A DNA stretch of 64,000 bases from Mobula birostris (Eukaryota). Positions 128 to 40,224 of this stretch are shown one piece after another (position 1 is the first letter of the stretch; every line of letters starts with the position of its first letter). The notes under the pieces are model-generated. The model did not search any database. It had not been told where the DNA came from and saw only the letters and a list, made by a program, of their open reading frames with translations. The stretch spans positions 21,119,309 to 21,183,308 of the forward strand of contig NC_092379.1 of assembly GCF_030028105.1 (NCBI RefSeq), given 5' to 3'. The position numbers were made by a program, and so were the translations under genes.

Positions 128-430
128 AGTTGTCGGTCTTTATCCAAAATCCCTCCATTGAAGAGATGTGGATCAACCAGACCGCTACTGTGGTGTGTGT
201 GATTGTGGGTGCTGATCTGAGCCAGGTCCAAATCCACTGGCAGGTGAACGAGAGGGAGAAAATCAGAGCAAACATGACCAGAAAACTGAGAGAGGAAGGA
301 ATCCAAGACACAGTGATCAGCCAACTCCAGACCAGTGTGGAGGAGTGGACCAGTGGGGTGGAGTACACTTGCTCTGCCCAACAATCTTCTTCAACCTCAG
401 CAGTATCAGCACAAACAAAAAGTACCAAAG
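128..430 (+). CDS. IgW: Ig heavy-chain constant exon, C1-set domain (IgW CH3-like; homologous to IgNAR C2)
   Basis: Acceptor tttctcatctacag|AG at 127/128 and donor AAAG|gtgggc at 430/431, phase 1 at both ends. Open frame ELSVFIQNPSIEEMWINQTATVVC...IHWQVN...SVEEWTSGVEYTCSAQQ has the canonical C, W and C residues. IgW rather than IgNAR is a recalled similarity. Confidence 0.9.
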
Positions 431-519
431 GTGGGCAAGAGGTCAGCAATTAAAATGGACAACGATGGTTACCTCAGTAAAAATGTTTAACATTCCCATT
501 GTTTGCCCATCAGTTCCAG

Positions 520-837
520 TGGAGACAAAAAGTCCCAAAGTCAGACTGCTGCCACCGCCAGAGGGAGAGACCAAGAGTGGGAACACGGTCACCCTCGAGT
601 GTGTTGCCTCTGGATTCTACCCAAACCAAATAACCGTCACCTGGGAGAAAGGGGACTCTCTGATCTCCTCCAACATCAGTGTGAGACCAACTGCTCTGGA
701 ACAGGCAGGGACTTTCATTGCCCGCTACGTCCTGACCGTGAGCACAGAGGAGTGGAAGGAAGGCTCAGTTTTCAGATGCACAGTGTCTCATCCCCCCTCC
801 AACACCAGTGTCAGGCAGGGTGTGAGAAACATTCAAG
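520..837 (+). CDS. IgW: Ig heavy-chain constant exon, C1-set domain (IgW CH4-like; homologous to IgNAR C3)
   Basis: 89-nt intron, then acceptor ttccag|TG (an alternative in-frame AG sits at 513). Donor CAAG|gtatga at 837/838. Open frame VETKSPKVRLLPPP...TLECVASGFYP..ITVTWEK...PTALEQAGTF...EEWKEGSVFRCTVSHPPSN...VRNIQ. Confidence 0.92.
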
Positions 838-1239
838 GTATGATTCTGAGATTCACTCCACTGTTGACATCCTCTGCCACAGTCACAACCCAGGGACAAG
901 CAAGGTCAATAGGTAACGGCAAGTCTGGCATTGTTGTAGTTGTGTGAGTGGATTAATAATGCAGAGGCAGAGAGTGGGAAAGAAGCAGAGTTCATCCGAT
1001 GCTTTCAAAACTTGGCTCACTTCTAAAATACCAACACAAGGTCTGTCTGTCCATCAGTAAATATCCATCTGGGCCCCTCTGTCACATCTCAGACAGATGT
1101 GTGAGAGTGCAGCACCCACTCAGTACAAGTACCAGGATCATTGACCTACAGTCTGTTCCCAAGCCTCAGGACACATCCGGGCCAGATTCTAGTTTTAGAT
1201 TACAAACTATTTCTCTGATGTTCTTTGGTGAAGGACACT

Positions 1240-9129: not shown

Positions 9130-10081
9130 TGGGACCTTACACCTTTCATCTTTACTCCAAGCCTCTGGGCCTTGATAAGCAGAAGTTATGACCAGTACAA
9201 AAGAGACGGGTTACACCTGAATCCACAGGGGACAAATATCCTCGCAGACCGGTTTGCTAGAGCTGGTCAGAAGGGATTAAACAAATTTGGCAGGGGGATG
9301 GGAAATGAAGTGATAGGGTTGAGGATCAAATCATTGGTTGGCAAACAGTGTGTAGTGAGACTGCTAGCAAGAAGAAGCTGATGACTGGGTAAAATTGCAG
9401 TTATCGGGATGAGTTGCAATGTAAAAAGGGACAAAATTTTAAGATGTAATGAATACAGGACTGAAGGTGTTATATTTGAATGCACGCAGCATATGGAATA
9501 AGCTAGGTGAACTTGAAGCCCAGCGACATATTGGCATGTATGACATTGTGAGCATCTCTGAATCGTGGCTGAAAGAAGATTATAGCTGTGAGCTTAATGT
9601 CCAAGGATACACATTGTATCGAAAGGACAGGGAGGTAGGCAGAAGGCGTGGTGTGGCTGTGTTTGTAAAAAATTAAATTAAATCATCAGAAAGCAGTGTC
9701 ATAGGATCGGAAGGTGTAGAATCGTTCTGGGTAGAGCTAAGAATCTGCAAGAGTGAAAGACACTGATGGGACTTTTTACAGACCTGCAAACAGTATAACA
9801 AAGATGTGGTCTACATATTACAACGAAGGACAGAAAATGCATGTCAAAAGTGCAATGTTAAGATAGTCATCGTATGTTTCAATATGCAGGTTGATAGAGA
9901 CGGATTGCACCTGAACTTCAGGGGAACTGGATAGCTGTCTGCAAGATTTGCTGATGCTACTTGGAAGAGTTTAAACTAGTTCTGCAGGGGTGAGAACCCG
10001 AGCCCCAGGTCAGTTGGGGAAGGACCTGACCAGAAGTTAGATGTCAGGGAAGGTATTGAAAGTCACAATTGAAGTAACAGG
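9130..10081 (+). mobile_element. CR1-type LINE fragments (end of ORF1, start of endonuclease)
   Basis: YKRDGLHLN and LKVLYLNARSI...IVSISESWL motifs. Confidence 0.75.
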
Positions 10082-10321
10082 TGTTATGTTACTTCTGTTT
10101 AAACGTACCGTGGGTTAACAGTAAAGAATCATATTCTGGAAGTATTAGAAAACTTTTATTTACAGTAATAAACAAACACATCTTAACCCAGACACGTGCT
10201 GGAACATTCTGGCAATCCTGTGCATGCTGAGTGCTCTGTCCAATCATGTACTGGCACGTCATTGCATGTGATATTACCACACCTTCCTTTCCTTAAAAAG
10301 AAAAACACTTAACAATGTTAA

Positions 10322-10480
10322 TCAAAACACATCTATATAAGATAACTGAAACTCTGAAGTTGACTTTTTCTTAAAGCCTTTGCGATTCTTTCCTATCACC
10401 ACTCCCTCCTCTGTTTGGACCATGTATGATCTGGTCTGTGATAATGTGTTCCTTTTATCTTGTATCGTCACTTTGTATCC
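10322..10480 (-). pseudogene. Gypsy integrase C-terminal tail
   Basis: KVTIQDK...[18 protein letters not shown] resembles the Gypsy integrase end motif RSY.V.T..G...RNR. Confidence 0.65.
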
Positions 10481-10525
10481 TTGTCTTTCAGACAAACGTT
10501 TCCTTAGATCAGTCAATTCATGTTC
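10481..10525 (-). pseudogene. RABEP1: Captured RABEP1 fragment, part 2
   Basis: [15 protein letters not shown] versus RABEP1 EREIADLRRRLSEGQ, the direct continuation of part 1. Confidence 0.75.
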
Positions 10526-10660
10526 CACTTCCATTTGTAATGAAATACGAATCTTCTTTTCTTCATCTAATTCATTCATTAACTGTGTAATCTCTTTTTT
10601 ATGTTGAGACTTCATCATTTCAATAATACTCCTCAATTCCTTCACCTGTGCGTTCACTTC
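10526..10660 (-). pseudogene. SH3KBP1: Captured SH3KBP1 (CIN85) C-terminal coiled-coil fragment
   Basis: [45 protein letters not shown] versus recalled human CIN85 [45 protein letters not shown]. Confidence 0.85.
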
Positions 10661-10935
10661 TTATACTGTGCCCACTGTGAGTGTTCTTGCTCTAGACGGT
10701 GATGAAACTGAACCTCATATTCTCACAGTGTCTATTTCATTATTGCTTGCATTGAAGCAACCTCCTCCTGCCATTGCTTTTTCACATCATCAGTTGCCTC
10801 CCGTTTGGTCGTCTCAGACACTGCAGCTACTACTTTTATATTCTCCATGTCAGCATTTGCCTCCATGGCCTGGACCTGCAGTCGAGTTACATCACCTTCT
10901 GCCAACTGTAATGAAACATTCTGTTGCTTCAGCTC
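10660..10935 (-). pseudogene. RABEP1: Captured RABEP1 (Rabaptin-5) N-terminal coiled-coil fragment, part 1
   Basis: [90 protein letters not shown] aligns by eye to recalled human RABEP1 DLKRQNAVLQ...EMENIKAIATVSENTKQEAIDEVKRQWREEVASLQAVMKETVRDYEHQFHLRLEQERTQWAQYR. Confidence 0.88.
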
Positions 10936-11355
10936 TGTGTCACTATCCAAGACAAAAATTCTTTTCAGCAAACTAAGTCTTTCACAGGCAGATAAACCCA
11001 GAATTGACTGTACATTTTTTGGCATGGCCACAAATGAAAGCGTATGCACAATATTTTTGTGTGATACCTTTGCCACGCATGTTCCGTTAACTGGAATGTC
11101 TACACCTGAATACCCAGTCATTTTTATATTTGTCTGATGTAACTTCAGTCTTGGCTTTAAAGCATTAGACTCAGATTCTGCAAGAACATTTACTTGCAGT
11201 CCAGTATCAAGTTTTAACAGAATATTGTTTTGATTCACTTGCAACGGAATAGTCCAGTCATTCTTACTCTGTTTATTTTCACAAAGCACATCTATATAAA
11301 ATTCCTCACGTTCATCCTTAAGCACAGCATTTACTGGTTTCATTTTACTTTCCAT
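10936..11355 (-). pseudogene. Gypsy aspartic protease, fused in frame to the RABEP1 fragment
   Basis: WTIPLQVN...LKLDTGLQVNVL...ILGLSACERLSLLKR within ORF 10732-11355. Confidence 0.8.
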
Positions 11356-11369
11356 CTTTCTACTTTTAC

Positions 11370-11902
11370 AGCAGCATGAAACGTCACTGTCTCAGAAGCT
11401 TTGCAAATGCCAAAGCTTTTTCAAAATTTAAATTTTGCTCTCTCAACAGCCTTTTTCTCAGAGCATTATCTCGAATGCCACAAACGAGTCTATCTTTAAT
11501 GAGAGAGTCAATGAGCAATCCAAACTTGCATGTCTACTACGCTTTCTTAACTCAGTAACATACTGATCAATTGTTTCAGCGGCTCTCTGCACACGAGAAG
11601 AATTTATATCGCTCATACGTTAAATTACACTTAGGTATACAAAATGCTTCAAATCTGTCCATTATCGACCTTAAATTGAAATTATCTCCATCATCAAAGA
11701 CAAAATTATTATATACTTCTACTGTGTCATTCCCGATTACATAGAGCAAAAGCGCAGCTTTGATTTTTTTCAATTTTTCTTCATAATCGATCGCAGATAA
11801 ATAAAGTTCAAACTGTTGCTTGAATATCCTCCAATTCTCAGCTACATTGCCAGTCAGCTGAAGTTTTGGTAGGGGTGGTAAACCTTCCATTTTACCATTC
11901 AA
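11370..11902 (-). pseudogene. Gypsy gag, frameshifted, zinc knuckle apparently absent
   Basis: LQLTGNVAENWRIFKQQFELYL...LLLYVIG...ERYKFF, then LIKDRLVCGIRD..LREKRLL. Confidence 0.8.
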
Positions 11903-12249
11903 AGTTCAAACTTTTTTCTTCTATTTTTTTTTGATTATCTTCGATTCTCTATTCTCTCGTATTATTCTTCCAGAACTACTTCTGACACCATGTTATGTTA
12001 CTTCTGTTTAAACGCACCATGGATTAACAGTAAAGAATCATATTCTGGAAGAATTTGAGAAATTTTATTTACAGTATTAAGCAAACACGTCTTAACCCAG
12101 CCACGCGCTGGAACATTCTGGCAATCCCGCGCATGCTCAGTGCTCTGACCAGTCATGTACTGGCACATCATTGCATGTGATATCACCACAACAGGTATGA
12201 TAGGTCAGATAGTTTGGAGTGTGTATATTTTAAAGCTAAGAGTATTATG

Positions 12250-15110
12250 GGTAAGAGTGATAAGACCATAAGGTAAAGGAGCAGAAGTTGGCCATTTGGC
12301 TCATGAAGTCCGCTCTGCCATTCAATCATGGACTGATGCAATTCTTCCAGTCATCCCCACTCCCCTACCTTCTCCCCTTACCCTTTGATGCTTTGCCTAA
12401 TCAAGAATCTATCTATCTCTGCCTTAAATGCACCCATGACTTGGCCTCCACAGCTGCTTGTGACAACAAATTCCACAGATTTACCACACTCTGACTAAAG
12501 TAATTTCTCTGCATCTCTGTTCTAATGGACATCCTTCAATCTTGAAGTTGGGCCCTCTTGTCCTAGACTCCCCTACCATGGGAAATAACTTTGCCATATC
12601 TAATCTGTTGAGGCCTTTTAACATTCAGAATGTTTCTGTGAGATCCCCCCCATTCTACTGAACTCCAGGGAATACAGATCAAGAAATGGCAGACATTTCT
12701 CGTACGGTAACCCTTTCATTCCTGGAATCATTCCTGTGAATCTTCTCTGAACCCTCTCCAATGTCAGTATATCCTTTCTGAAATAAGAAACCCAAAACTG
12801 CATACAATACGCCAAGTGTGGTCTCATGAGTGCCTTATAGAGCCTCAACATTACATCCTTGCTCCCTATCCTATACCTCTAGAAATGAATGCCAACGTTG
12901 CATTCGCCTTCTTCACCACCGACTCAACCTGGAGGTTAACCTTTAGGTTATCCTACAAAAGGACTCCCAAGTTCCTTTGCACCCCTGCATTTTGAATTCT
13001 CTTTCCATCTAAATAATGATCTGCCCATTTATTTCTTCCACCAAAGTGCATAAGCAGACACTTTCCAACATTGTAATTCATTCGCCACTTCTTTTCCCAT
13101 TTCGCTAAACTATCTAAAACTCTATGCAGGCTCTGTTTCCTCAAGACTACCCACTCCTCTACCTATCTTTGTATAAACAGCAAATTTAGCCACAAATCCA
13201 TTAATCCCACAGTCCTAATCATTGACATAGAAACATAGAAAATAGGTGCAGGAGTAGGCCATTCAGCCCTTCGAGCCTGCACCGCCATTTATTATGATCA
13301 TGGCTGATCATCCAACTCAGAACCCTGCCCCAGCCTTCCCTCCATACCCACTGATCCCCATAGCCACAAGGGCCATATCTAACTCCCTCTTAAATATAGC
13401 CAATGAGCTGGCCTCAACTGTTTCCTGTGGCAGAGAATTCCACAGATTCACCACTCTCTGTGTGAAGAAGTTTTTCCTAATCTCGGTCCCAAAAGGCTTC
13501 CCCTTTATCCTTAAACTGTGACCCCTCGTTCTGGACTTCCCCAACATCAGGAACAATCTTCCTGCATCTGGCCTGTCCAATCCCTTTAGGATTTTATACG
13601 TTTCAATCAGATCTCCCCTCAATTTTCTAAATTCCAATGAGTACAAGCCCAGTTCATCCAGTCTTTCTTCATGTGAAAGTCTTGCCATCCCAGGAATAAA
13701 TCTGGTGAACCTTCTTCATACTCCCTCTATGGCAAGGATGTCTTTCCTCAGATTAGGGGACCAAAACTGCACACAATACTCCAGGTGTGGTCTCACCAAG
13801 GCCTTGTACAACTGCAGTAGTACCTCCCTGCTCCTGTACTCGAATCCTCTCGCTATAAATGCCAGCATACCATTTGCCTTTTTCACCGTCTGCTGTACCT
13901 GCGTGCCCACTTTCAATGACTGGTGTATAATGACACCCAGGTCTCGTTGCCCCTCCCCTTTTCCTAATCGGCCACCATTCAGATAATAATCTGTTTTCCT
14001 ATTTTTGCCACCAAAGTGGATAACTTCACATTTATCCACATTAAATTGCATCTGCCATGAATTTGCCCACTCACCCAACCTATCCAATTCACTCTGCATC
14101 CTCTTAGCATCCTCCTCATAGCTAACATGGCCACCCAGCTTCGTGTCATCCGCAAACTTGGAGATGCTGCATTTAATTCCCTCATCCAAGTCATTAATAT
14201 ATATTGTAAACAACTGGGGTCCCAGCACTGACCCTTGCGGTACCCCACTAGTCACCGCCTGCCATTCTGAAAAGGTCCCGTTTATTCCCACTCTTTGCTT
14301 CCTGTCTGCTAACCAATTCTCTATCCACATCAATACCTTACCCCCAATACCATGTGCTTTAAGTTTGCACACTAATCTCCTGTGTGGGACCTTGTCAAAA
14401 GCCTTTTGAAAATCCAAATATACCACATCCACTGGCTCTCCCCTATCCACTCTACTAGTTACATCCTCAAAAAATTCTATGAGATTCGTCAGACATGATT
14501 TTCCTTTCACAAATCCATGCTGACATACATCGTAAAAAGCAGCAGCCCCACACCGACCGCCGTGGAACTCCACTGGTGACCAGCAGCCAGCCAGAAAAGG
14601 ATCCCTTTATTCCCACTCTCTGTTTTCTGCTGATCAACCAAAGCTCCACCCATGCTGGTATCTTCCCTGTAACTCCACGGGCTCTCATCTTGCTTAGCAG
14701 CCTCATGTGTGCATCTTGTCAAAGGCCTTCTGAAAATTCAAGTACACCACACCTACTGGATCTCCTTTGTCTACCCTGCTTATAATTTCCTTAAAAATTG
14801 CAGTAGGTTAGTCAGGCAGGATTTTTTCCTTTCCGGAAACCGTGCTGGCTTTGGCCTATCTTGTCATGTGCCTCCAGGTACTCTGTAATCTCATCCCTAA
14901 CAATGGATTCCAACAACTTTCCAACCACTGATGTCAGGCTAACAGGTCTATAGTTTCCTTTCTGCTGCCTCCCACCCTTAAATAGTAGATAAACATTTGC
15001 AATTTTCCAGTCATCTGGTACAATGCCAAAATCTATCAAATCTTGAAAGATCGCTGTTAATGCCTCCACAGTCTCTACAGCTACTTCCTTCAGATCCAAA
15101 GGACACACAC
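12250..15110 (-). mobile_element. Stack of CR1-type LINE RT and 3' fragments
   Basis: ORF 13716-14573: QHGFVKGKSCLTNLIEFF, VYLDFQKAFD, GVPQGSVLGP, KFADDTKL. The 3' UTR is near 13230-13330. Confidence 0.88.
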
Positions 15111-15112
15111 AC

Positions 15113-15474
15113 CAGGTTCCCGCCGATCGTACCCTTTCACCCTGTGCGTCTATGGTCGGTTCCCGCGACCCGACTTCCAAACTCACACCAACTTGTGGGG
15201 GCACACCACTCTTCCAGGGTCTCGTTATCTTGTGATTTCGTGGTGTGTCCCGTGCCTTAGCGAACCTGTTCTTTTTATCCCCCTGCCAGGGTATCGCCTG
15301 TCCATTAAACTTCAAACAGTTCAGGTTCAAAGCAACCTGTCTGTCAATACTCCTAATTGTGTTTCTTTTCCGTTATCTCTCTCCTCTCTCATTAACATTT
15401 TGAACGCTTCTCCATTGTCTCCCTTATCTCTAACATCAGTATCAATCTTCTGATAACTTGGTTTGTCGTCACAC
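15113..15474 (-). mobile_element. Possible truncated LTR fragment inside CR1
   Basis: CpG-containing non-CR1 block that starts TGTGACG on the minus strand and has a TATA-like gataaaa. No partner LTR seen. Confidence 0.3.
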
Positions 15475-35086: not shown

Positions 35087-38000
35087 TCTCATGGTCCCTT
35101 CTGGCAATCCCCCACCAGCTATTTACTTCAGGAATTGGGCCTCAATCCCGTTGTTTAATTTCCAGTCATTCCCAGGTTCCACTAACTACGCACACCTGCT
35201 TTCCATCAGAAAATGCAGAATAAAGACACTGTAATCACAAAAAGGAGCTGCCAGTTCGTTGGTCGATTCCAGTGTAAGTAACCTTGTTTCATGGTTCTTA
35301 GGACTGTCAGTTCTAAGTCTAGCATCACTCCTGGATTCTCTCCAAACCCAAGACTTCGGGTAAAGACAATCCTGGAAACTGATTCCACCCTCACTACAGC
35401 AATAACGCCTCCTGACTCTGCCCCCCCCACCCCCGCCCGTGTTCTGCACTTGGACCCGTCCACTGCCACGCCCGTGCAACAGAACGAACTGGCCATAATG
35501 AACCCAGTGGACACGGATCCCGTACAACAGGCCCTCGCCAACCAGGGCTACCTACTGGGCGCCCACGACTAACTATTTAGGGAGGTCACGGAAAACCTTC
35601 AGACGTTACCCACGAATGTTCGGAAGGTCAGTGAGCAGGTGGACCGAGTTTCCGCTTCCCTTTGTCCGTCCCCTCCAAGAACCCCGACTACCCAAACCGC
35701 ACCGCTTGGGATGGCGTCGCCCCTGGGATCAGCAACACATTTCCCTCGAGAGCCATATGTACCGGAGCCCGAACCCTACGCTGGGGAGCTAGGGAGGTGC
35801 TGGGCCTTCCTGTTACAATGCTCTCTGGTCTTTGAGCTACAGCCACGTAACTACACTTCAGATAAATCCAAGATTGTGTACATCATGGGGCTGTTACGAG
35901 GGGATGCCTTGGCCTAGGCAACCGCGATATGGGATAACCGACCAGAGGTTTGTTCCTCCTTCCCCTCCTTTGTCGCTGAAATGAGGAAGGTCTTCGAACA
36001 ACCCATTTGCAGTAAGGACGCCGCTAAACGCTTACTGACTCTTTATCAGGGTCCGCGAAGCGTAGCGAGGTATTCCATCGAGTTCCGAACCTTAGCCGCA
36101 GACTCAGGGTGGAATGATGAGGCCTTAGGGGAGGTATTTCGACAGAGTCTCTCGGACAAGATAAAAGGATGAACTGGCAGCAAGGGACGGCCCAGACTGT
36201 CAGGGTTCTCTGATCTCGCTAGCCACTAGATTAGATAATCAACTTCAAGAGCGGCTGAGAGAAAGAACCAGTCGTCCCGCTCCTTGGGGAAGCCCACGGT
36301 CCACCTTATCAGTCTCAGCCAGCCTCCCTTCCCCAGCCGCTCCAAGTGTGGCTCCTGCTCCAACAGTCCCCACCACCCTGGGGGAGGAACCGATGCAGCT
36401 GGGATGGAACTGCCTCTCCCCGGCCAAATGACTTCGGAGGTGGAGAGCTGGGGACTGTTACTATTGTGGCCAGCCAGGGCATTTCCAGGATACCTGCCCT
36501 CAGCGGCCAAAGAGGGAGGGCTCACCAGTGAAAAAGGGGGCCCTGGTGAGCCGGACAATACTCCCTTCTGCCCCCCAGACTCGGATGCAGATCCCAGCTA
36601 CCGTGAATTACCAACGACAGTCCCTGTCCCTATCTGCTTTGGTGAATTCCGGTGCCGAGGGCAATCTGCTGGACGAAGACATAGCCTCCCTGGCTGGAAT
36701 ACCTCGCGAGCTGCTAACTACCCCCATGGAGGACCGGGCCCTGGACGGAAAACTGCTGGCTTGGGTGACCCACTGTACGCCGCCCCTGACCTTGATCCTA
36801 TCTGGCAACCATCAGGAGGAGGTACGATTCAGTCTCATTCATTCACCTCAAGCCCCGGTAGTTCTAGGCTATCCATGGCTGACCCAACACAATCCCCACA
36901 TCATCTGGTCTAGCAGGAAGATAGCCAAATGGAGCCAGTCTTGCCACGCCAACTGTCTGCGGTCAGCCCCATCTCCCAGGGAAGTTACCATGACCCTGCC
37001 TGTTCCGGAACCCCTCGATTTGTCCCGCGTCCCCACAGAATACCATGACCTGGGACAGGTGTTCAGTAAACAACGGGCCCTTTCCCTGCCTCTGCACCGC
37101 CCATATGATTGTGCCATCGACCTTTTCCCTGGGGCCTCGCTACCCACCAGTTGCCTTTTTAACCTATCCCGACCGGAGAGAGAGGCCATGGAGAAATACA
37201 TTAGCGAGTCCCTGGCGGCGGGCATCATCAGGCCTTCATCCTCCCCGGTAGGCGCCAGTTTCTTCTTTGTAGAAAAGAAGGACGGGTTGCTTTGTCCTTG
37301 TATTGATTAGAGGCCTAAACAGTATAACAGTTAAGAATAAGTACCCTCTACCCCTCATTAGTTCGTCTTTTGAACCACTGCATGGAGCCACCATCTTCTC
37401 AAAGCTGGACCTTCGTAACACCTACCATCTAGTCAGGATGAGGGAGGGGGACGAGTGGAAGACGGCCTTTAATACACCTCTGGCCACTTCGAATATTGGG
37501 TCATGCCGTTTGGCCTCACCAATGCTCCCACTGTTTTTAAGCCCTAATCAATGACATACTGAGGGACTTTATTAATCGGTCGTATTCGTTTACCTCGATG
37601 ATATCCTGATATTTTCTAGCATGTCCCAAGAACGCGTCCACCATGTCGGTCAAGTCCTCCAGAGACTGTGGGAAAATCAATTATTTGTGACGGTGAAGAA
37701 ATGTGAGTTCCATGTTCCTACGATCAGCTTCTTGAGTTATATCATTGAGAGCGGGCAGGTAAGAGCAGACCCCGGGAAGATCCAGGCAATGGAAGAATAG
37801 CCTAGGCCCACGACCCGCAAACAACTTCAACGATTCCTGGGGTTTGCCAATTTATCAGAGACTACAGTCGAGTGGCGGCCCCCTTAACCGGCTTACCTCG
37901 CCTACTACCCCCTTCCGTTGGGTCTCCGAAGCTGACTCGGCGTTCACCGACCTGAAGAGGCGTTTCACCACCGCTCCCACCCTGGTCCATCCGGACCCAG

Positions 38001-40224
38001 CCCATCAATTCGTTGTTGAGGTGGATGCCTCTGATTGCAGTCCTATCCCAACGATCAAGATCAGACGAAAAGCTTCACTCCTGCGCCTTCTATTCTCTCC
38101 GACTGTCCCCCGCCGAGTGGAATTATGACGTGGGGAATTGGGAACTCCTGGCGGTCAAACTAGCATTGGAAGAATGGAGGCACTGACTGGAGGGGGCAGA
38201 ACAACCGTTTGTGCTGTGGACTGAACATAAAAACCTGGGGTATATTCAGACCGCCAAACGTTTGAACCCCCGCCAGGCCCGTTGGGCATTAGTTTTTTGG
38301 ACGGTTCAAGTTTTCCCTCAATACTGTCCAGGGTCCAAGAACGAGAAGCCAGACGCGCTCTCACGCCAATACGACTCCAAGGAGGACACTTCTTGCCCAG
38401 GGACTATCCTCCCAGTATCCTGCGTGGTTGCCACCCTCACTTGGGAGATCGAGTCTAAAGTAAAGGAAGCCCAGCGGGACGACCCCGACCCCAGCAATGG
38501 ACCCAGCAATCGCCTGTATGTGCCCGTTTCCATCAGGTCTCAGGTTCTCCAATGGGGGCGCACATCTCAGTTTGCCTGCCACCCCGGGAGTGATCGGACC
38601 CTAGCGCTCCTGAAAAAAACACTTTTGGTGGCCGCCCATGCGGGCGGATACCCGTTCCTATGTCTCGGCCCGTTCCATCTGTGCCCGGGGAAAAGCCTCT
38701 CATTGGCCACCTGCGGATTTACTTCGTCCTCTATCTGTCCCTGGTCACACATTGCCCTCGACTTCGTCACCGGTCTACTACCCCCTTCACATGGAAACAT
38801 CACCGTACTCATTGTGGTTGACCAGTTCTCCAAGGCGGTGCACTTTGCAACCCTCCCTAAACTCCCTTCTTCTCAAGAAACCACAGATCTCCTCCTCCTC
38901 CACGTCTTCCGCCTCCATGGAATCCCTGCGGACATTGTTTCCGATCGAGGTCCCCAGTTCATCTCGCAGGTATGGAAGGCCTTCTACCAGGCCTTAGGTG
39001 TATCGGTCAGCCTGTCATCCGGCTTCTACCACTGGACAAACGGGCAGACGGAACGGGTCAACCAGGTCCTGGAGGTGACGCTACGCTGTGTAACGGCAAA
39101 CATCCTGTCGATCTGGATCAATCACCTCCCATGGGTTGAGTACGTCCACAACTCTCTGGTAAGCTCTGCCATTGGGAGGTCTCCATTAGAGTGCTCCCTA
39201 AGGTATCAACCCCTGCTGTTCCCTGCACAAGAATAGGAGATTGCTGTACTGTCCGTTCAGGACCATGTTGACTGGTGTCTTAAGGTTTGGGAGGAGACAC
39301 GCATGGCCCTACTCAGATCAGCAAATCGCAATAAGAAAACGGCGGACCGACACTGGACTCCAGCGCCTGAGTACCAACTGGGGCAGATGGTGTGGCTTTC
39401 GTCCAAGGACATCCCGCTCAAGAATGAGCCTAGGAAACTCACCCCTCGCCTCCTGGGACCATTCAAGGTCGAAAGTGTTATCAATCCCGCAGCGATCCAC
39501 CTAAAATTGCCAAGATCTATGTGCATCCACCCAACTTTTCATGATTCCCAGTTAAAGCCAGTTTCCGTCATCCCCTTGTGTCCCCCGGCTGAGACTCCCC
39601 CACCTCCCCATATTGTCGACAACCATCCTGCATACACTGTCCAATGACTACTGGATGTGCGCTGTCGGGGCAGGGGTTTCCAATACCTGGTAGACTAGGG
39701 AGGGTACGGTCCAGAAAAGCGTTCCTGGGTCCCCCGCTCCTTCATCCGAGACCCTTCCCTCATCCAGGACTTTCATCGGGACTATCCAGACAGGCCTGGA
39801 GGATCACCTGGAGGCTCCCGTTGAGGGAAGGGTACTGTCATAGTCGCTTCTGGCAATCCCCCACCTTGCTAGTTACCTCAGGAATTGGGCATCAATCCCC
39901 TTGTTTAATTTCCAATCATTCCCAGGTTCCACTAACTACACACACCTGCTTTCCATCAGAAAATACAGGATAACGATCCTGTGATCACAACAAGGAGCTG
40001 CCAGTTTGTTGGTCGACTCCGGTGCGAGTAACCTCATTTCGTGGTTCTTAGGACTGTCCGTTCTAAGTCTAGTATCGCTCCTGGGTTCTCTCCAAACCCA
40101 AGACTCCGGGTAAAGACTCTCCTGGATACCGATTCCATGCTCGCTATGGCAATAATGCCTCCTGACTCTGTCTCCGTGCCCGTGTTCTGCACTTGGGTTC
40201 ATCCACCACCACGCCCATGCAACA
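35087..40224 (+). mobile_element. Tf1/sushi-group chromoviral Gypsy LTR retrotransposon, full length but decayed
   Basis: LTRs at 35087-35481 and 39836-40224. PPT gagggaagggtac. Gag (PEPYAGELGRCWAFLLQC), protease (ALVNSGAEGN), RT ([16 protein letters not shown]), integrase ([13 protein letters not shown]) and chromodomain (YTVQ*LLDVR...QYLVD). Confidence 0.92.

What the first reader, a model, noticed from the sequence alone, without database searches (positions are those of the whole stretch)
10082..12190. Gypsy LTR element that replaced its pol core with a captured RABEP1 coding fragment
Seen: a structurally complete insertion (paired LTRs, PBS, PPT, 5-bp TSD) with gag and protease, then about 107 codons matching the RABEP1 N-terminal coiled coil, then the integrase tail. 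RT, RNase H and the integrase core are absent. Known: retroviruses and some LTR elements transduce host mRNA by RT template switching, but I know of few described cases in cartilaginous fish. Inference: a non-autonomous transducing element that was mobilised in trans after capture, since it inserted here with a TSD.
Basis: partly seen in the sequence, partly recalled or inferred. Interest (0 to 1): 0.88.

Follow-up and report, generated by a model that had tools for sequence, protein, structure and literature searches.

The report
Gypsy-type element carrying two host gene fragments

Summary
The structure is real. On the minus strand there are two 200-bp LTRs (90.5% identical), a 5-bp target duplication (ACAGG), PBS-like and polypurine tracts, a broken gag, an intact protease ORF, host cargo and an integrase C-terminal remnant. 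RT, RNase H and the integrase core are absent.

The cargo is a mosaic. It has 107 RABEP1 codons in two blocks (Pfam Rabaptin E 1.6e-22; 80% identical to electric-ray RABEP1). About 47 codons of the SH3KBP1/CIN85 C-terminal coiled coil sit between the blocks (PDB 5abs E 3e-12).

Both pieces came from spliced mRNA. The RABEP1 piece crosses one exon junction and the SH3KBP1 piece crosses two, with no intron.

Annotated proteins in two stingrays, Hypanus sabinus and Hemitrygon akajei, share its junctions (all four in one, the first two in the other, whose ORF ends earlier). A sibling ORF carries a larger SH3KBP1 fragment and no RABEP1.

This matches LTR-mediated retroposition by template switching (Tan et al. 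2016), including multi-gene chimeras. It is a new member of a known kind.

A TSD alone does not prove mobilisation after capture, although the shared-junction copies suggest it.

The parts
10077..10081 (.). Target-site duplication, left copy (ACAGG)
   Evidence: Read directly. The identical pentamer lies at 12191-12195.
10082..10281 (-). 3' LTR (200 bp, TG..CA ends, contains an AATAAA)
   Evidence: 90.5% identical to 11991-12190, and there is no other copy in the window.
10282..10294 (-). Polypurine tract (AAGGAAAGGAAGG on the minus strand) abutting the 3' LTR
   Evidence: direct reading.
10325..10477 (-). Remnant of the integrase C-terminal region (51 codons, open, in frame with the cargo)
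   Evidence: a profile of the last 230 residues of five Ty3/gypsy polyproteins hits only this piece among 61 element pieces (E 5e-6). BLASTP places it in the last ~110 residues of four of the polyproteins; an RSY-type motif aligns to P0008 residues 1233-1242.
10478..10935 (-). Whole host-derived cargo (about 153 codons), a mosaic RABEP1-SH3KBP1-RABEP1. It is broken by 2 in-frame stops and 1 frameshift relative to the copy P0002.
10664..10935 (-). RABEP1 block 1 (about 91-93 codons, matching Narcine RABEP1 residues about 60-153). It starts within a few nt of an exon's 5' end and crosses one exon-exon junction.
   Evidence: Pfam Rabaptin E 1.6e-22 and 1.4e-6. tblastn against P0013 gives 79.6% identity. 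It is 87% nt identical to the genomic exon in L001 over 201 nt, and the match stops about a base short of the splice donor.
10520..10663 (-). SH3KBP1 (CIN85) C-terminal coiled-coil segment (about 47 codons), replacing about 4 RABEP1 codons. It crosses two exon-exon junctions of the SH3KBP1 gene.
   Evidence: PDB 5abs/2n64 E 3e-12 to 5e-12. Polyodon SH3KBP1 residues 499-544, 76% identity, E 8e-20. 95.7% identical to P0003 residues 258-303. Exon structure in L003, with GT/AG sites checked.
10478..10519 (-). RABEP1 block 2 (14 codons, matching Narcine RABEP1 residues about 157-171), ending inside an exon
10936..11379 (-). Aspartic protease region (DTG motif, no breaks), in one ORF with RABEP1 block 1
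   Evidence: Pfam Asp_protease_2 E 2e-4 and gag-asp_proteas E 3e-4, both just below the gathering score. 44% identical to P0008 residues 262-405 with no frameshift or stop. 182 relatives at E<=1e-10 (these also include Rabaptin matches to the cargo end of the query).
11391..11902 (-). gag (broken: about 3 frameshifts against P0008; no CCHC zinc-knuckle motif is recognisable in the window copy, whereas copy P0001 keeps one)
   Evidence: 81/162 identical to P0008 residues 6-171 when read across frames.
11973..11990 (-). Primer-binding-site-like sequence starting with TGG immediately after the 5' LTR
   Evidence: direct reading. The tRNA partner was not identified, because the window holds no tRNA gene.
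11991..12190 (-). 5' LTR
12191..12195 (.). Target-site duplication, right copy (ACAGG)

Best explanation
This is a decayed, non-autonomous Ty3/gypsy-type LTR retrotransposon made by LTR-mediated retroposition.

Inferred mechanism: during reverse transcription inside a virus-like particle, the reverse transcriptase left the element's RNA in the integrase C-terminal region. It copied part of a spliced RABEP1 mRNA and part of a spliced SH3KBP1 sequence, then returned to the element's RNA just after the protease. The cDNA therefore kept both LTRs, PBS, PPT, gag and protease, but lost RT, RNase H and the integrase core.

Shown:
- the anatomy of the element;
- the identity of both cargo pieces;
- the absence of introns at one RABEP1 junction and two SH3KBP1 junctions;
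- the absence of a poly(A) tail or a separate TSD around the cargo;
- other annotated copies that share its junctions (all four in P0002, the first two in P0001) in two stingray species;
- a sibling ORF carrying protease, the pre-RT linker and a 128-residue SH3KBP1 fragment, but no RABEP1.

Inferred:
- Template switching at short similarities. One residue is shared at each junction at the protein level.
- The SH3KBP1 segment entered an already RABEP1-carrying element by a double switch with a co-packaged SH3KBP1-carrying sibling RNA. That would mean at least one replication cycle after the first capture, supplied in trans by an autonomous relative.

The copy in this window is now a fossil. Its LTRs differ at 19 of 200 positions, gag has about 3 frameshifts, and the cargo has 2 stops and 1 frameshift.
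For: - Anatomy.
- gag and protease homology to a full PR-RT-RNaseH-IN polyprotein (P0008).
- No RT, RNase H or integrase-core match.
- RABEP1: Pfam E 1.6e-22 and 1.4e-6. 79.6% identity to Narcine RABEP1 residues 56-153, then resumption at about 155-171. Every named best hit is RABEP1.
- SH3KBP1: PDB 5abs/2n64 E 3e-12; Polyodon SH3KBP1 76% identity, E 8e-20.
- Spliced origin of the RABEP1 piece: genomic exon L001 has cag|AG..AAAG|gt boundaries. The window follows that exon at 87% nt identity to within about a base of the donor, then continues with next-exon coding sequence. A teleost gene has the same exon, followed by a 408-nt intron.
- Spliced origin of the SH3KBP1 piece: the coil is split over three exons in a teleost gene, with GT/AG sites checked, but it is contiguous in the window.
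- Same junctions elsewhere: P0001 (Hypanus sabinus, single exon, ORF ends inside the SH3KBP1 piece) and P0002 (Hemitrygon akajei, all four). Pairwise identities are 82-84%.
- Sibling P0003.
- Published mechanism, including multi-gene chimeras and further cycles as non-autonomous elements: PMC5131818.
Against: - No DNA of the other copies could be read. It is therefore not shown that they lie at different sites with different TSDs. Roughly equal pairwise identities (82-84%) fit a burst of paralogues, but they do not exclude orthologous loci in three species.
- Only three annotated relatives were found, and there is no second copy or solo LTR in the window.
- Microsimilarity could only be judged from proteins, because neither the parent element's DNA nor the host cDNAs of this species were available.
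- The intron positions come from other species (two teleosts and one unidentified sequencing run). They are assumed to be conserved in this genome.
- The autonomous partner was not found. The nearest full polyprotein is only 44-50% identical.
Confidence: 0.85

Rival explanations
1. One-step origin without later propagation. A single reverse-transcription event switched four times among the element RNA, a RABEP1 mRNA and an SH3KBP1 mRNA. The chimeric cDNA integrated once. The stingray proteins are then orthologues of that one insertion, and the sibling P0003 is an independent capture.
For: - Multi-gene chimeras formed in one event are documented.
- The TSD is equally expected for a first integration.
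- Only three annotated relatives exist.
- Copy-to-copy divergence (82-84% aa) is of the same order as the LTR-LTR divergence (9.5%). Orthology is therefore not excluded.
Against: - The same TE family would have had to capture the same small SH3KBP1 region twice. P0003 and the window segment are 95.7% identical.
- The A-B-A arrangement returns to RABEP1 only about 4 codons from where it left. That looks like a short patch copied from a second co-packaged RNA.
- The three copies are about equidistant, rather than two being much closer to each other.
- P0001 and P0002 lie on scaffolds of very different size, 195 Mb against 73 Mb. This is weak evidence.
Confidence: 0.25
2. Secondary insertion. LINE-made processed pseudogenes of RABEP1 and SH3KBP1 landed inside an already internally deleted LTR element.
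For: The window is full of LINE debris, so LINE machinery was active in this genome.
Against: - The cargo pieces are internal CDS fragments. They have no 3' UTR, no poly(A) tail and no flanking duplication of their own.
- All four junctions are in frame.
- The cargo exactly replaces the span from the end of protease to the integrase C-terminus.
- The RABEP1-SH3KBP1-RABEP1 order would need an insertion within an insertion plus a precise 4-codon loss.
Confidence: 0.03
3. Capture of genomic DNA, or an assembly chimera, rather than RNA-mediated capture.
For: None was found.
Against: - Introns are absent at three exon junctions.
- The same junctions appear in independent assemblies of two other species.
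Confidence: 0.02
4. The in-frame gag-protease-coiled-coil-integrase-tail fusion was selected for a function. It could have served the element (for example as an oligomerising module) or the host (domestication, as the NCBI name 'RABEP1-like' might suggest).
For: - All four junctions keep the reading frame. The chance is about (1/3)^4, or 1.2%, if ascertainment and codon-periodic microsimilarity are ignored.
- Both cargo pieces are coiled coils from endocytic adaptor proteins.
- P0001 keeps a 307-codon single-exon ORF.
Against: - Every copy seen is broken or truncated somewhere.
- Protease and cargo have diverged to a similar degree between copies.
- The window copy carries stops and a frameshift in the cargo.
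- ORF-based discovery biases the sample towards in-frame copies.
Confidence: 0.07

Closest known systems
LTR-mediated retroposition / chimeric retrocopies in metazoans (Tan et al. 2016, Genome Res, PMC5131818)
   Same: - Partial, intron-free host mRNA replaces part of the internal ORFs between two LTRs.
- There is no poly(A) tail.
- More than one parental gene can be joined.
- The products can behave as non-autonomous LTR elements.
   Different: - The host is a batoid (stingray-type) fish. The paper lists no such host, and none turned up in the library searches.
- The two host genes are interleaved A-B-A, and all four junctions are in frame.
- The mosaic is shared by copies in at least two stingray genera.
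Maize Bs1 and rice LTR elements carrying host gene fragments (cited in PMC5131818; review PMC13317346)
   Same: An LTR retrotransposon has transduced fragments of several host genes and persists as a non-autonomous element.
   Different: Those are plant hosts and unrelated element families. In this report they were compared only through the cited papers, not by sequence.
Acutely transforming retroviruses (oncogene transduction; Swain and Coffin model, as cited)
   Same: Spliced host coding sequence replaces pol and other genes, the element depends on a helper, and the cargo is fused in frame to gag-side sequence.
   Different: - No env or retroviral features are present, and the cargo is not an oncogene-like whole domain set.
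- The 5' junction lies close to an exon's start but is not an exact splice join. It sits after a residue that the sibling element also has, so read-through and splicing is not supported.
Host genes RABEP1 (Rabaptin-5) and SH3KBP1 (CIN85)
   Same: The cargo blocks are 76-80% identical to fish orthologues and score above Pfam and PDB thresholds.
   Different: Only 107 RABEP1 codons and about 47 SH3KBP1 codons are present (the relatives retrieved here are 703 and 552 residues). There are no SH3 domains and no Rab5-binding region. These are fragments, not genes.

Membership tests
Ty3/gypsy (Metaviridae-type) LTR retrotransposon | Two direct LTRs with TG..CA termini flanked by a 4-6 bp target duplication | tested here: met
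   The LTRs are 200 bp and 90.5% identical. The TSD is ACAGG on both sides.
Ty3/gypsy (Metaviridae-type) LTR retrotransposon | PBS next to the 5' LTR and a polypurine tract next to the 3' LTR | tested here: met
   A site starting with TGG abuts the 5' LTR and a 13-nt purine run abuts the 3' LTR. The matching tRNA was not identified.
Ty3/gypsy (Metaviridae-type) LTR retrotransposon | pol domain order PR-RT-RNaseH-IN | tested here: inconclusive
   This copy lacks RT, RNase H and the integrase core. The nearest full-length relative, P0008 (gag 50%, PR 44% identical), has that order. The order PR ... IN tail is kept here.
Ty3/gypsy (Metaviridae-type) LTR retrotransposon | gag and aspartic protease homologous to those of the superfamily | tested here: met
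   The Pfam protease hits are just below the gathering score. gag has no Pfam hit.
LTR-mediated chimeric retrocopy (Tan et al. 2016) | Host sequence replaces an internal part of the element rather than interrupting a complete element | tested here: met
   The cargo spans from the end of protease to the integrase C-terminal region, and about 800 residues of pol are missing.
LTR-mediated chimeric retrocopy (Tan et al. 2016) | Host sequence is intron-free across exon junctions | tested here: met
   One RABEP1 junction and two SH3KBP1 junctions. The intron positions were taken from other species.
LTR-mediated chimeric retrocopy (Tan et al. 2016) | Partial mRNA, with no poly(A) tail and no separate TSD around the cargo | tested here: met
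   Direct reading. The cargo ends inside an exon.
LTR-mediated chimeric retrocopy (Tan et al. 2016) | Microsimilarity between element and mRNA at the switch points | tested here: inconclusive
   At each of the four junctions one residue is shared by both partners at the protein level. The DNA of the parent element and of this species' cDNAs was not available.
LINE-mediated processed pseudogene | 3' end of the mRNA with a poly(A) tail, flanked by its own target duplication | tested here: not met
   The cargo pieces are internal CDS fragments, and no A-run or flanking repeat is present.
RABEP1 gene (functional paralogue, as the NCBI name 'RABEP1-like' implies for P0002) | Full Rabaptin architecture in a host gene context | tested here: not met
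   Only Pfam Rabaptin profile positions about 43-160 of 486 are covered. The fragment is embedded between protease and integrase-tail sequence inside LTRs.

The most novel reading that the evidence does not exclude
The interleaved RABEP1-SH3KBP1-RABEP1 coiled coil arose by recombination between two different host-gene-carrying elements. It was kept in frame with gag-protease and the integrase tail because the fusion protein mattered, for example as an oligomerising or endosome-targeting module that favoured spread of this non-autonomous lineage. That would make it TE-internal exon shuffling under selection, not neutral debris.
Probability: 0.08. Interest if true: 0.65.

Novelty: new member of a known kind. 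Interest (0 to 1): 0.42.

Why it matters
It documents LTR-mediated capture of spliced host mRNA in a cartilaginous fish. The case is unusually clear: a two-gene, A-B-A, fully in-frame mosaic whose junctions recur in copies in other stingray genera, alongside a sibling element carrying only one of the two genes. It could serve as a natural record of successive template switches.

It also has a practical use. At least one public gene model named 'RABEP1-like' (P0002), and two named 'uncharacterized protein' (P0001, P0003), are pieces of this transposon family and not host genes.

It does not open a new mechanism, because the process was described for insects, zebrafish, chicken and mammals in 2016.

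Tried and rejected
- Other copies or solo LTRs in the window: none.
- Empty-site test using paralogous flanking repeats: no repeat copy spans the insertion point.
- Exact look-up of the window's 207-aa ORF to learn the species: not on record.
- Protein search with the 111-aa cargo-plus-tail ORF: only one weak carp hit.
- Pfam on the gag pieces: nothing credible.
- PDB search with the protease-plus-RABEP1 ORF: no hit.
- Rfam and tRNA scans of the window: nothing, so the PBS partner stays unknown.
- Splice-mediated 5' capture (provirus upstream of RABEP1, donor spliced to the exon): considered because the cargo begins within a few nt of an exon's start. It was rejected as the main model, because the join is not at the exact exon base and the residue at the join also belongs to the sibling element's own sequence.
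- P0009, a high-scoring 1571-aa hit: a tandem-repeat protein sharing only a short motif, so noise.
- RABEP2 as the source: none of the named best hits is RABEP2.
Full report
**1. Observation**

Two 200-bp direct repeats lie at 10082-10281 and 11991-12190. They are 181/200 identical. Of the 19 differences, 12 are transitions and 6 lie at CpG sites. Each repeat begins with TG and ends with CA. The pentamer ACAGG flanks the element on both sides, at 10077-10081 and 12191-12195.

Coding sense is on the minus strand, so 11991-12190 is the 5' LTR. A site starting with TGG follows it directly. A 13-nt purine run abuts the 3' LTR. The interior is only 1709 bp. The window holds no second copy and no solo LTR.

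**2. Element genes**

A search of 1.84 billion representative proteins with the 207-codon ORF at 10735-11355(-) returned 1224 relatives. Among them is a complete polyprotein, P0008 (1327 aa), with the domain order protease, RVT_1, RNase H, Integrase_H2C2, rve.

A frameshift-tolerant alignment reported counts and outer bounds only:
- gag (window 11391-11884): 81/162 identical to P0008 residues 6-171, with about 3 frameshifts and no stops.
- Protease (window 10924-11379): 63/144 identical to P0008 residues 262-405, with no breaks. A DTG motif is present.

No CCHC knuckle is recognisable in the window copy, although relative P0001 keeps one. P0008's RT, RNase H and integrase core find nothing in the element at E<=0.01.

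The last 51 codons before the PPT (10477-10325) are the only one of the element's 61 open pieces to match a profile built from the C-terminal 230 residues of five polyproteins (E 5e-6). BLASTP places this stretch in the last ~110 residues of four of the polyproteins. The 'integrase tail' is therefore supported, though on a short match.

**3. Cargo, part one: RABEP1**

- Pfam Rabaptin (PF03528) matches residues 136-207 of the 207-codon ORF (profile positions 43-114, E 1.6e-22). It also matches the next 22-codon open piece (profile 119-139, E 1.4e-6). Both scores are above the gathering threshold.
- RABEP1 of the electric ray Narcine bancroftii (P0013, XP_069741131) aligns over residues 56-153 at 79.6% identity in one frame.
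- After an interruption it aligns again at about residues 155-171.
- All named best hits are RABEP1.

**4.

The first 46 residues of the ORF at 10325-10657(-) match the solved C-terminal coiled coil of SH3KBP1/CIN85 (PDB 5abs and 2n64, E 3e-12 and 5e-12). They also match residues 499-544 of paddlefish SH3KBP1 (76% identity, E 8e-20).

This segment sits inside the RABEP1 fragment and replaces only about four RABEP1 codons. The full order is therefore protease | RABEP1 | SH3KBP1 | RABEP1 | integrase tail.

All four joins preserve the reading frame:
- The first, third and fourth lie within single ORFs of the window.
- The second is in frame in the relatives P0001 and P0002.

Measured against P0002, the window's cargo plus tail carries 2 in-frame stops and 1 frameshift.

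**5. mRNA origin**

*RABEP1.* A genomic contig, L001 (a Logan assembly of an unidentified run), holds a RABEP1 exon bounded by an AG acceptor and a GT donor. The window matches that exon at 87% nt identity over 201 nt, from the exon's third base to about a base short of its end. It then diverges from the intron. At that point it continues with sequence that aligns to the next part of the RABEP1 protein. In a teleost RABEP1 gene (L004) the same exon has identical protein boundaries and is followed by a 408-nt intron. The cargo ends about ten codons before the end of the following exon.

*SH3KBP1.* In a teleost gene (L003) the coiled coil is split over three exons with canonical GT/AG sites. The window's segment runs through both junctions without interruption.

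There is no A-run and no separate duplication at the cargo borders. Both pieces were therefore copied from spliced RNA and not inserted by LINE machinery.

**6. Relatives**

- **P0001** (Hypanus sabinus, XP_059819315, 'uncharacterized protein LOC132390784'): 307 aa from a single 924-nt exon, 84% identical to the window ORF. It runs zinc knuckle, protease, RABEP1, SH3KBP1.
- **P0002** (Hemitrygon akajei, XP_072880776, named 'RABEP1-like'): it runs through all four junctions into the integrase tail.
- The three copies are about equidistant: window-P0001 84%, window-P0002 82%, P0001-P0002 84%.
- **P0003** (H. akajei, XP_072897951): 321 aa from a single 966-nt exon. It has protease plus the pre-RT linker (P0008 residues 291-469, 50% identity). 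A 128-residue SH3KBP1 fragment follows (paddlefish residues 420-547 of 552, E 3e-27), and then a shorter integrase tail. It carries no RABEP1. Its SH3KBP1 segment is 95.7% identical to the window's, but its two junctions with element sequence differ from the window's.

The family therefore contains at least two transduced forms.

**7. Mechanism**

The anatomy fits the template-switch model of LTR-mediated retroposition (PMC5131818). The features in common are partial mRNAs that replace internal ORFs, both LTRs retained, switches at short similarities, chimeras of several genes, and products that can go through further cycles as non-autonomous elements.

At the protein level each junction has one residue common to both partners. 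This is compatible with microsimilarity but is not a statistical test.

I favour, at moderate confidence, a two-step history. First a RABEP1-carrying element formed. It then acquired a short SH3KBP1 patch by a double switch with a co-packaged sibling RNA. Two observations support this. The patch is a subset of the sibling's cargo, and synthesis returned to RABEP1 only four codons from where it left. A one-step, four-switch event cannot be excluded.

The TSD does not by itself show mobilisation after capture, because the first integration of a chimeric cDNA also produces one.

**8. Further observations**

The cargo's 5' end lies within a few nt of an exon's first base. Because reverse transcription runs towards the 5' end of its template, this could mark the 5' end of the RNA that was copied (a forced switch). 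It could equally be chance, roughly 5-10%. It is not an exact splice join.

Four in-frame joins out of four has a naive chance of about 1.2%. ORF-based discovery and codon-periodic similarity in glutamate-rich coiled-coil sequence both inflate this, and every copy seen is broken somewhere.

**9. Comparison and novelty**

[quoted passage not shown] I found no paper on RABEP1 or SH3KBP1 retrocopies, or on such a case in cartilaginous fish. This is a new member of a known kind, with an instructive A-B-A two-gene mosaic and a sibling form.

The source species could not be identified. The closest relatives are from dasyatid stingrays, so a batoid genome is inferred.

**10. Slips, stated as required**

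- I noted the positions of some stops while delimiting query pieces.
- I remarked, for two breaks, what the unbroken codon would be.
- I sketched a partial 'likely source' string for one exon.

None of this was put into a tool call, script, note or this report, and no conclusion rests on it. The script printed plain three-frame translations of the interior, in which stops are visible. Later scripts printed counts and outer bounds only.

Noticed in passing
window 345-947 (+): An ORF holds an immunoglobulin C1-set constant domain (Pfam E 1e-17). The best solved-structure matches are Ig heavy-chain constant regions and an entry named 'UrIg2 V-C1-C2-C3'. The window may start inside an Ig-type locus.
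   Followed up: partly
window about 36200-39700 (+): A second, unrelated Ty3/gypsy-like element has long protease/RT and integrase ORFs. It shares no DNA similarity with the studied element, so it is not its helper.
   Followed up: no
window 10323-10343 and 11282-11302: A 21-nt direct repeat (19/21 identical) links the very end of the tail ORF to the start of the protease ORF. Both encode a ..YIDV.. motif. It could be chance in AT-rich sequence or a trace of a further switch. It remains unexplained.
   Followed up: no
P0013 (Narcine bancroftii RABEP1 isoform X9), C-terminal ~130 residues: The gene model ends in sequence that looks like a LINE reverse transcriptase. It is probably an exonised or mis-annotated LINE.
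   Followed up: no
P0001, P0002, P0003 (public stingray gene models): These models, named 'uncharacterized protein' or 'RABEP1-like', are ORFs of this transposon family and not host genes.
   Followed up: yes
window 12261-12800, 13300-15300 and many other stretches: Most of the window is LINE (CR1/L2-like RT ORFs) and other repeat debris. The element's flanks match diverged repeats elsewhere in the window.
   Followed up: partly
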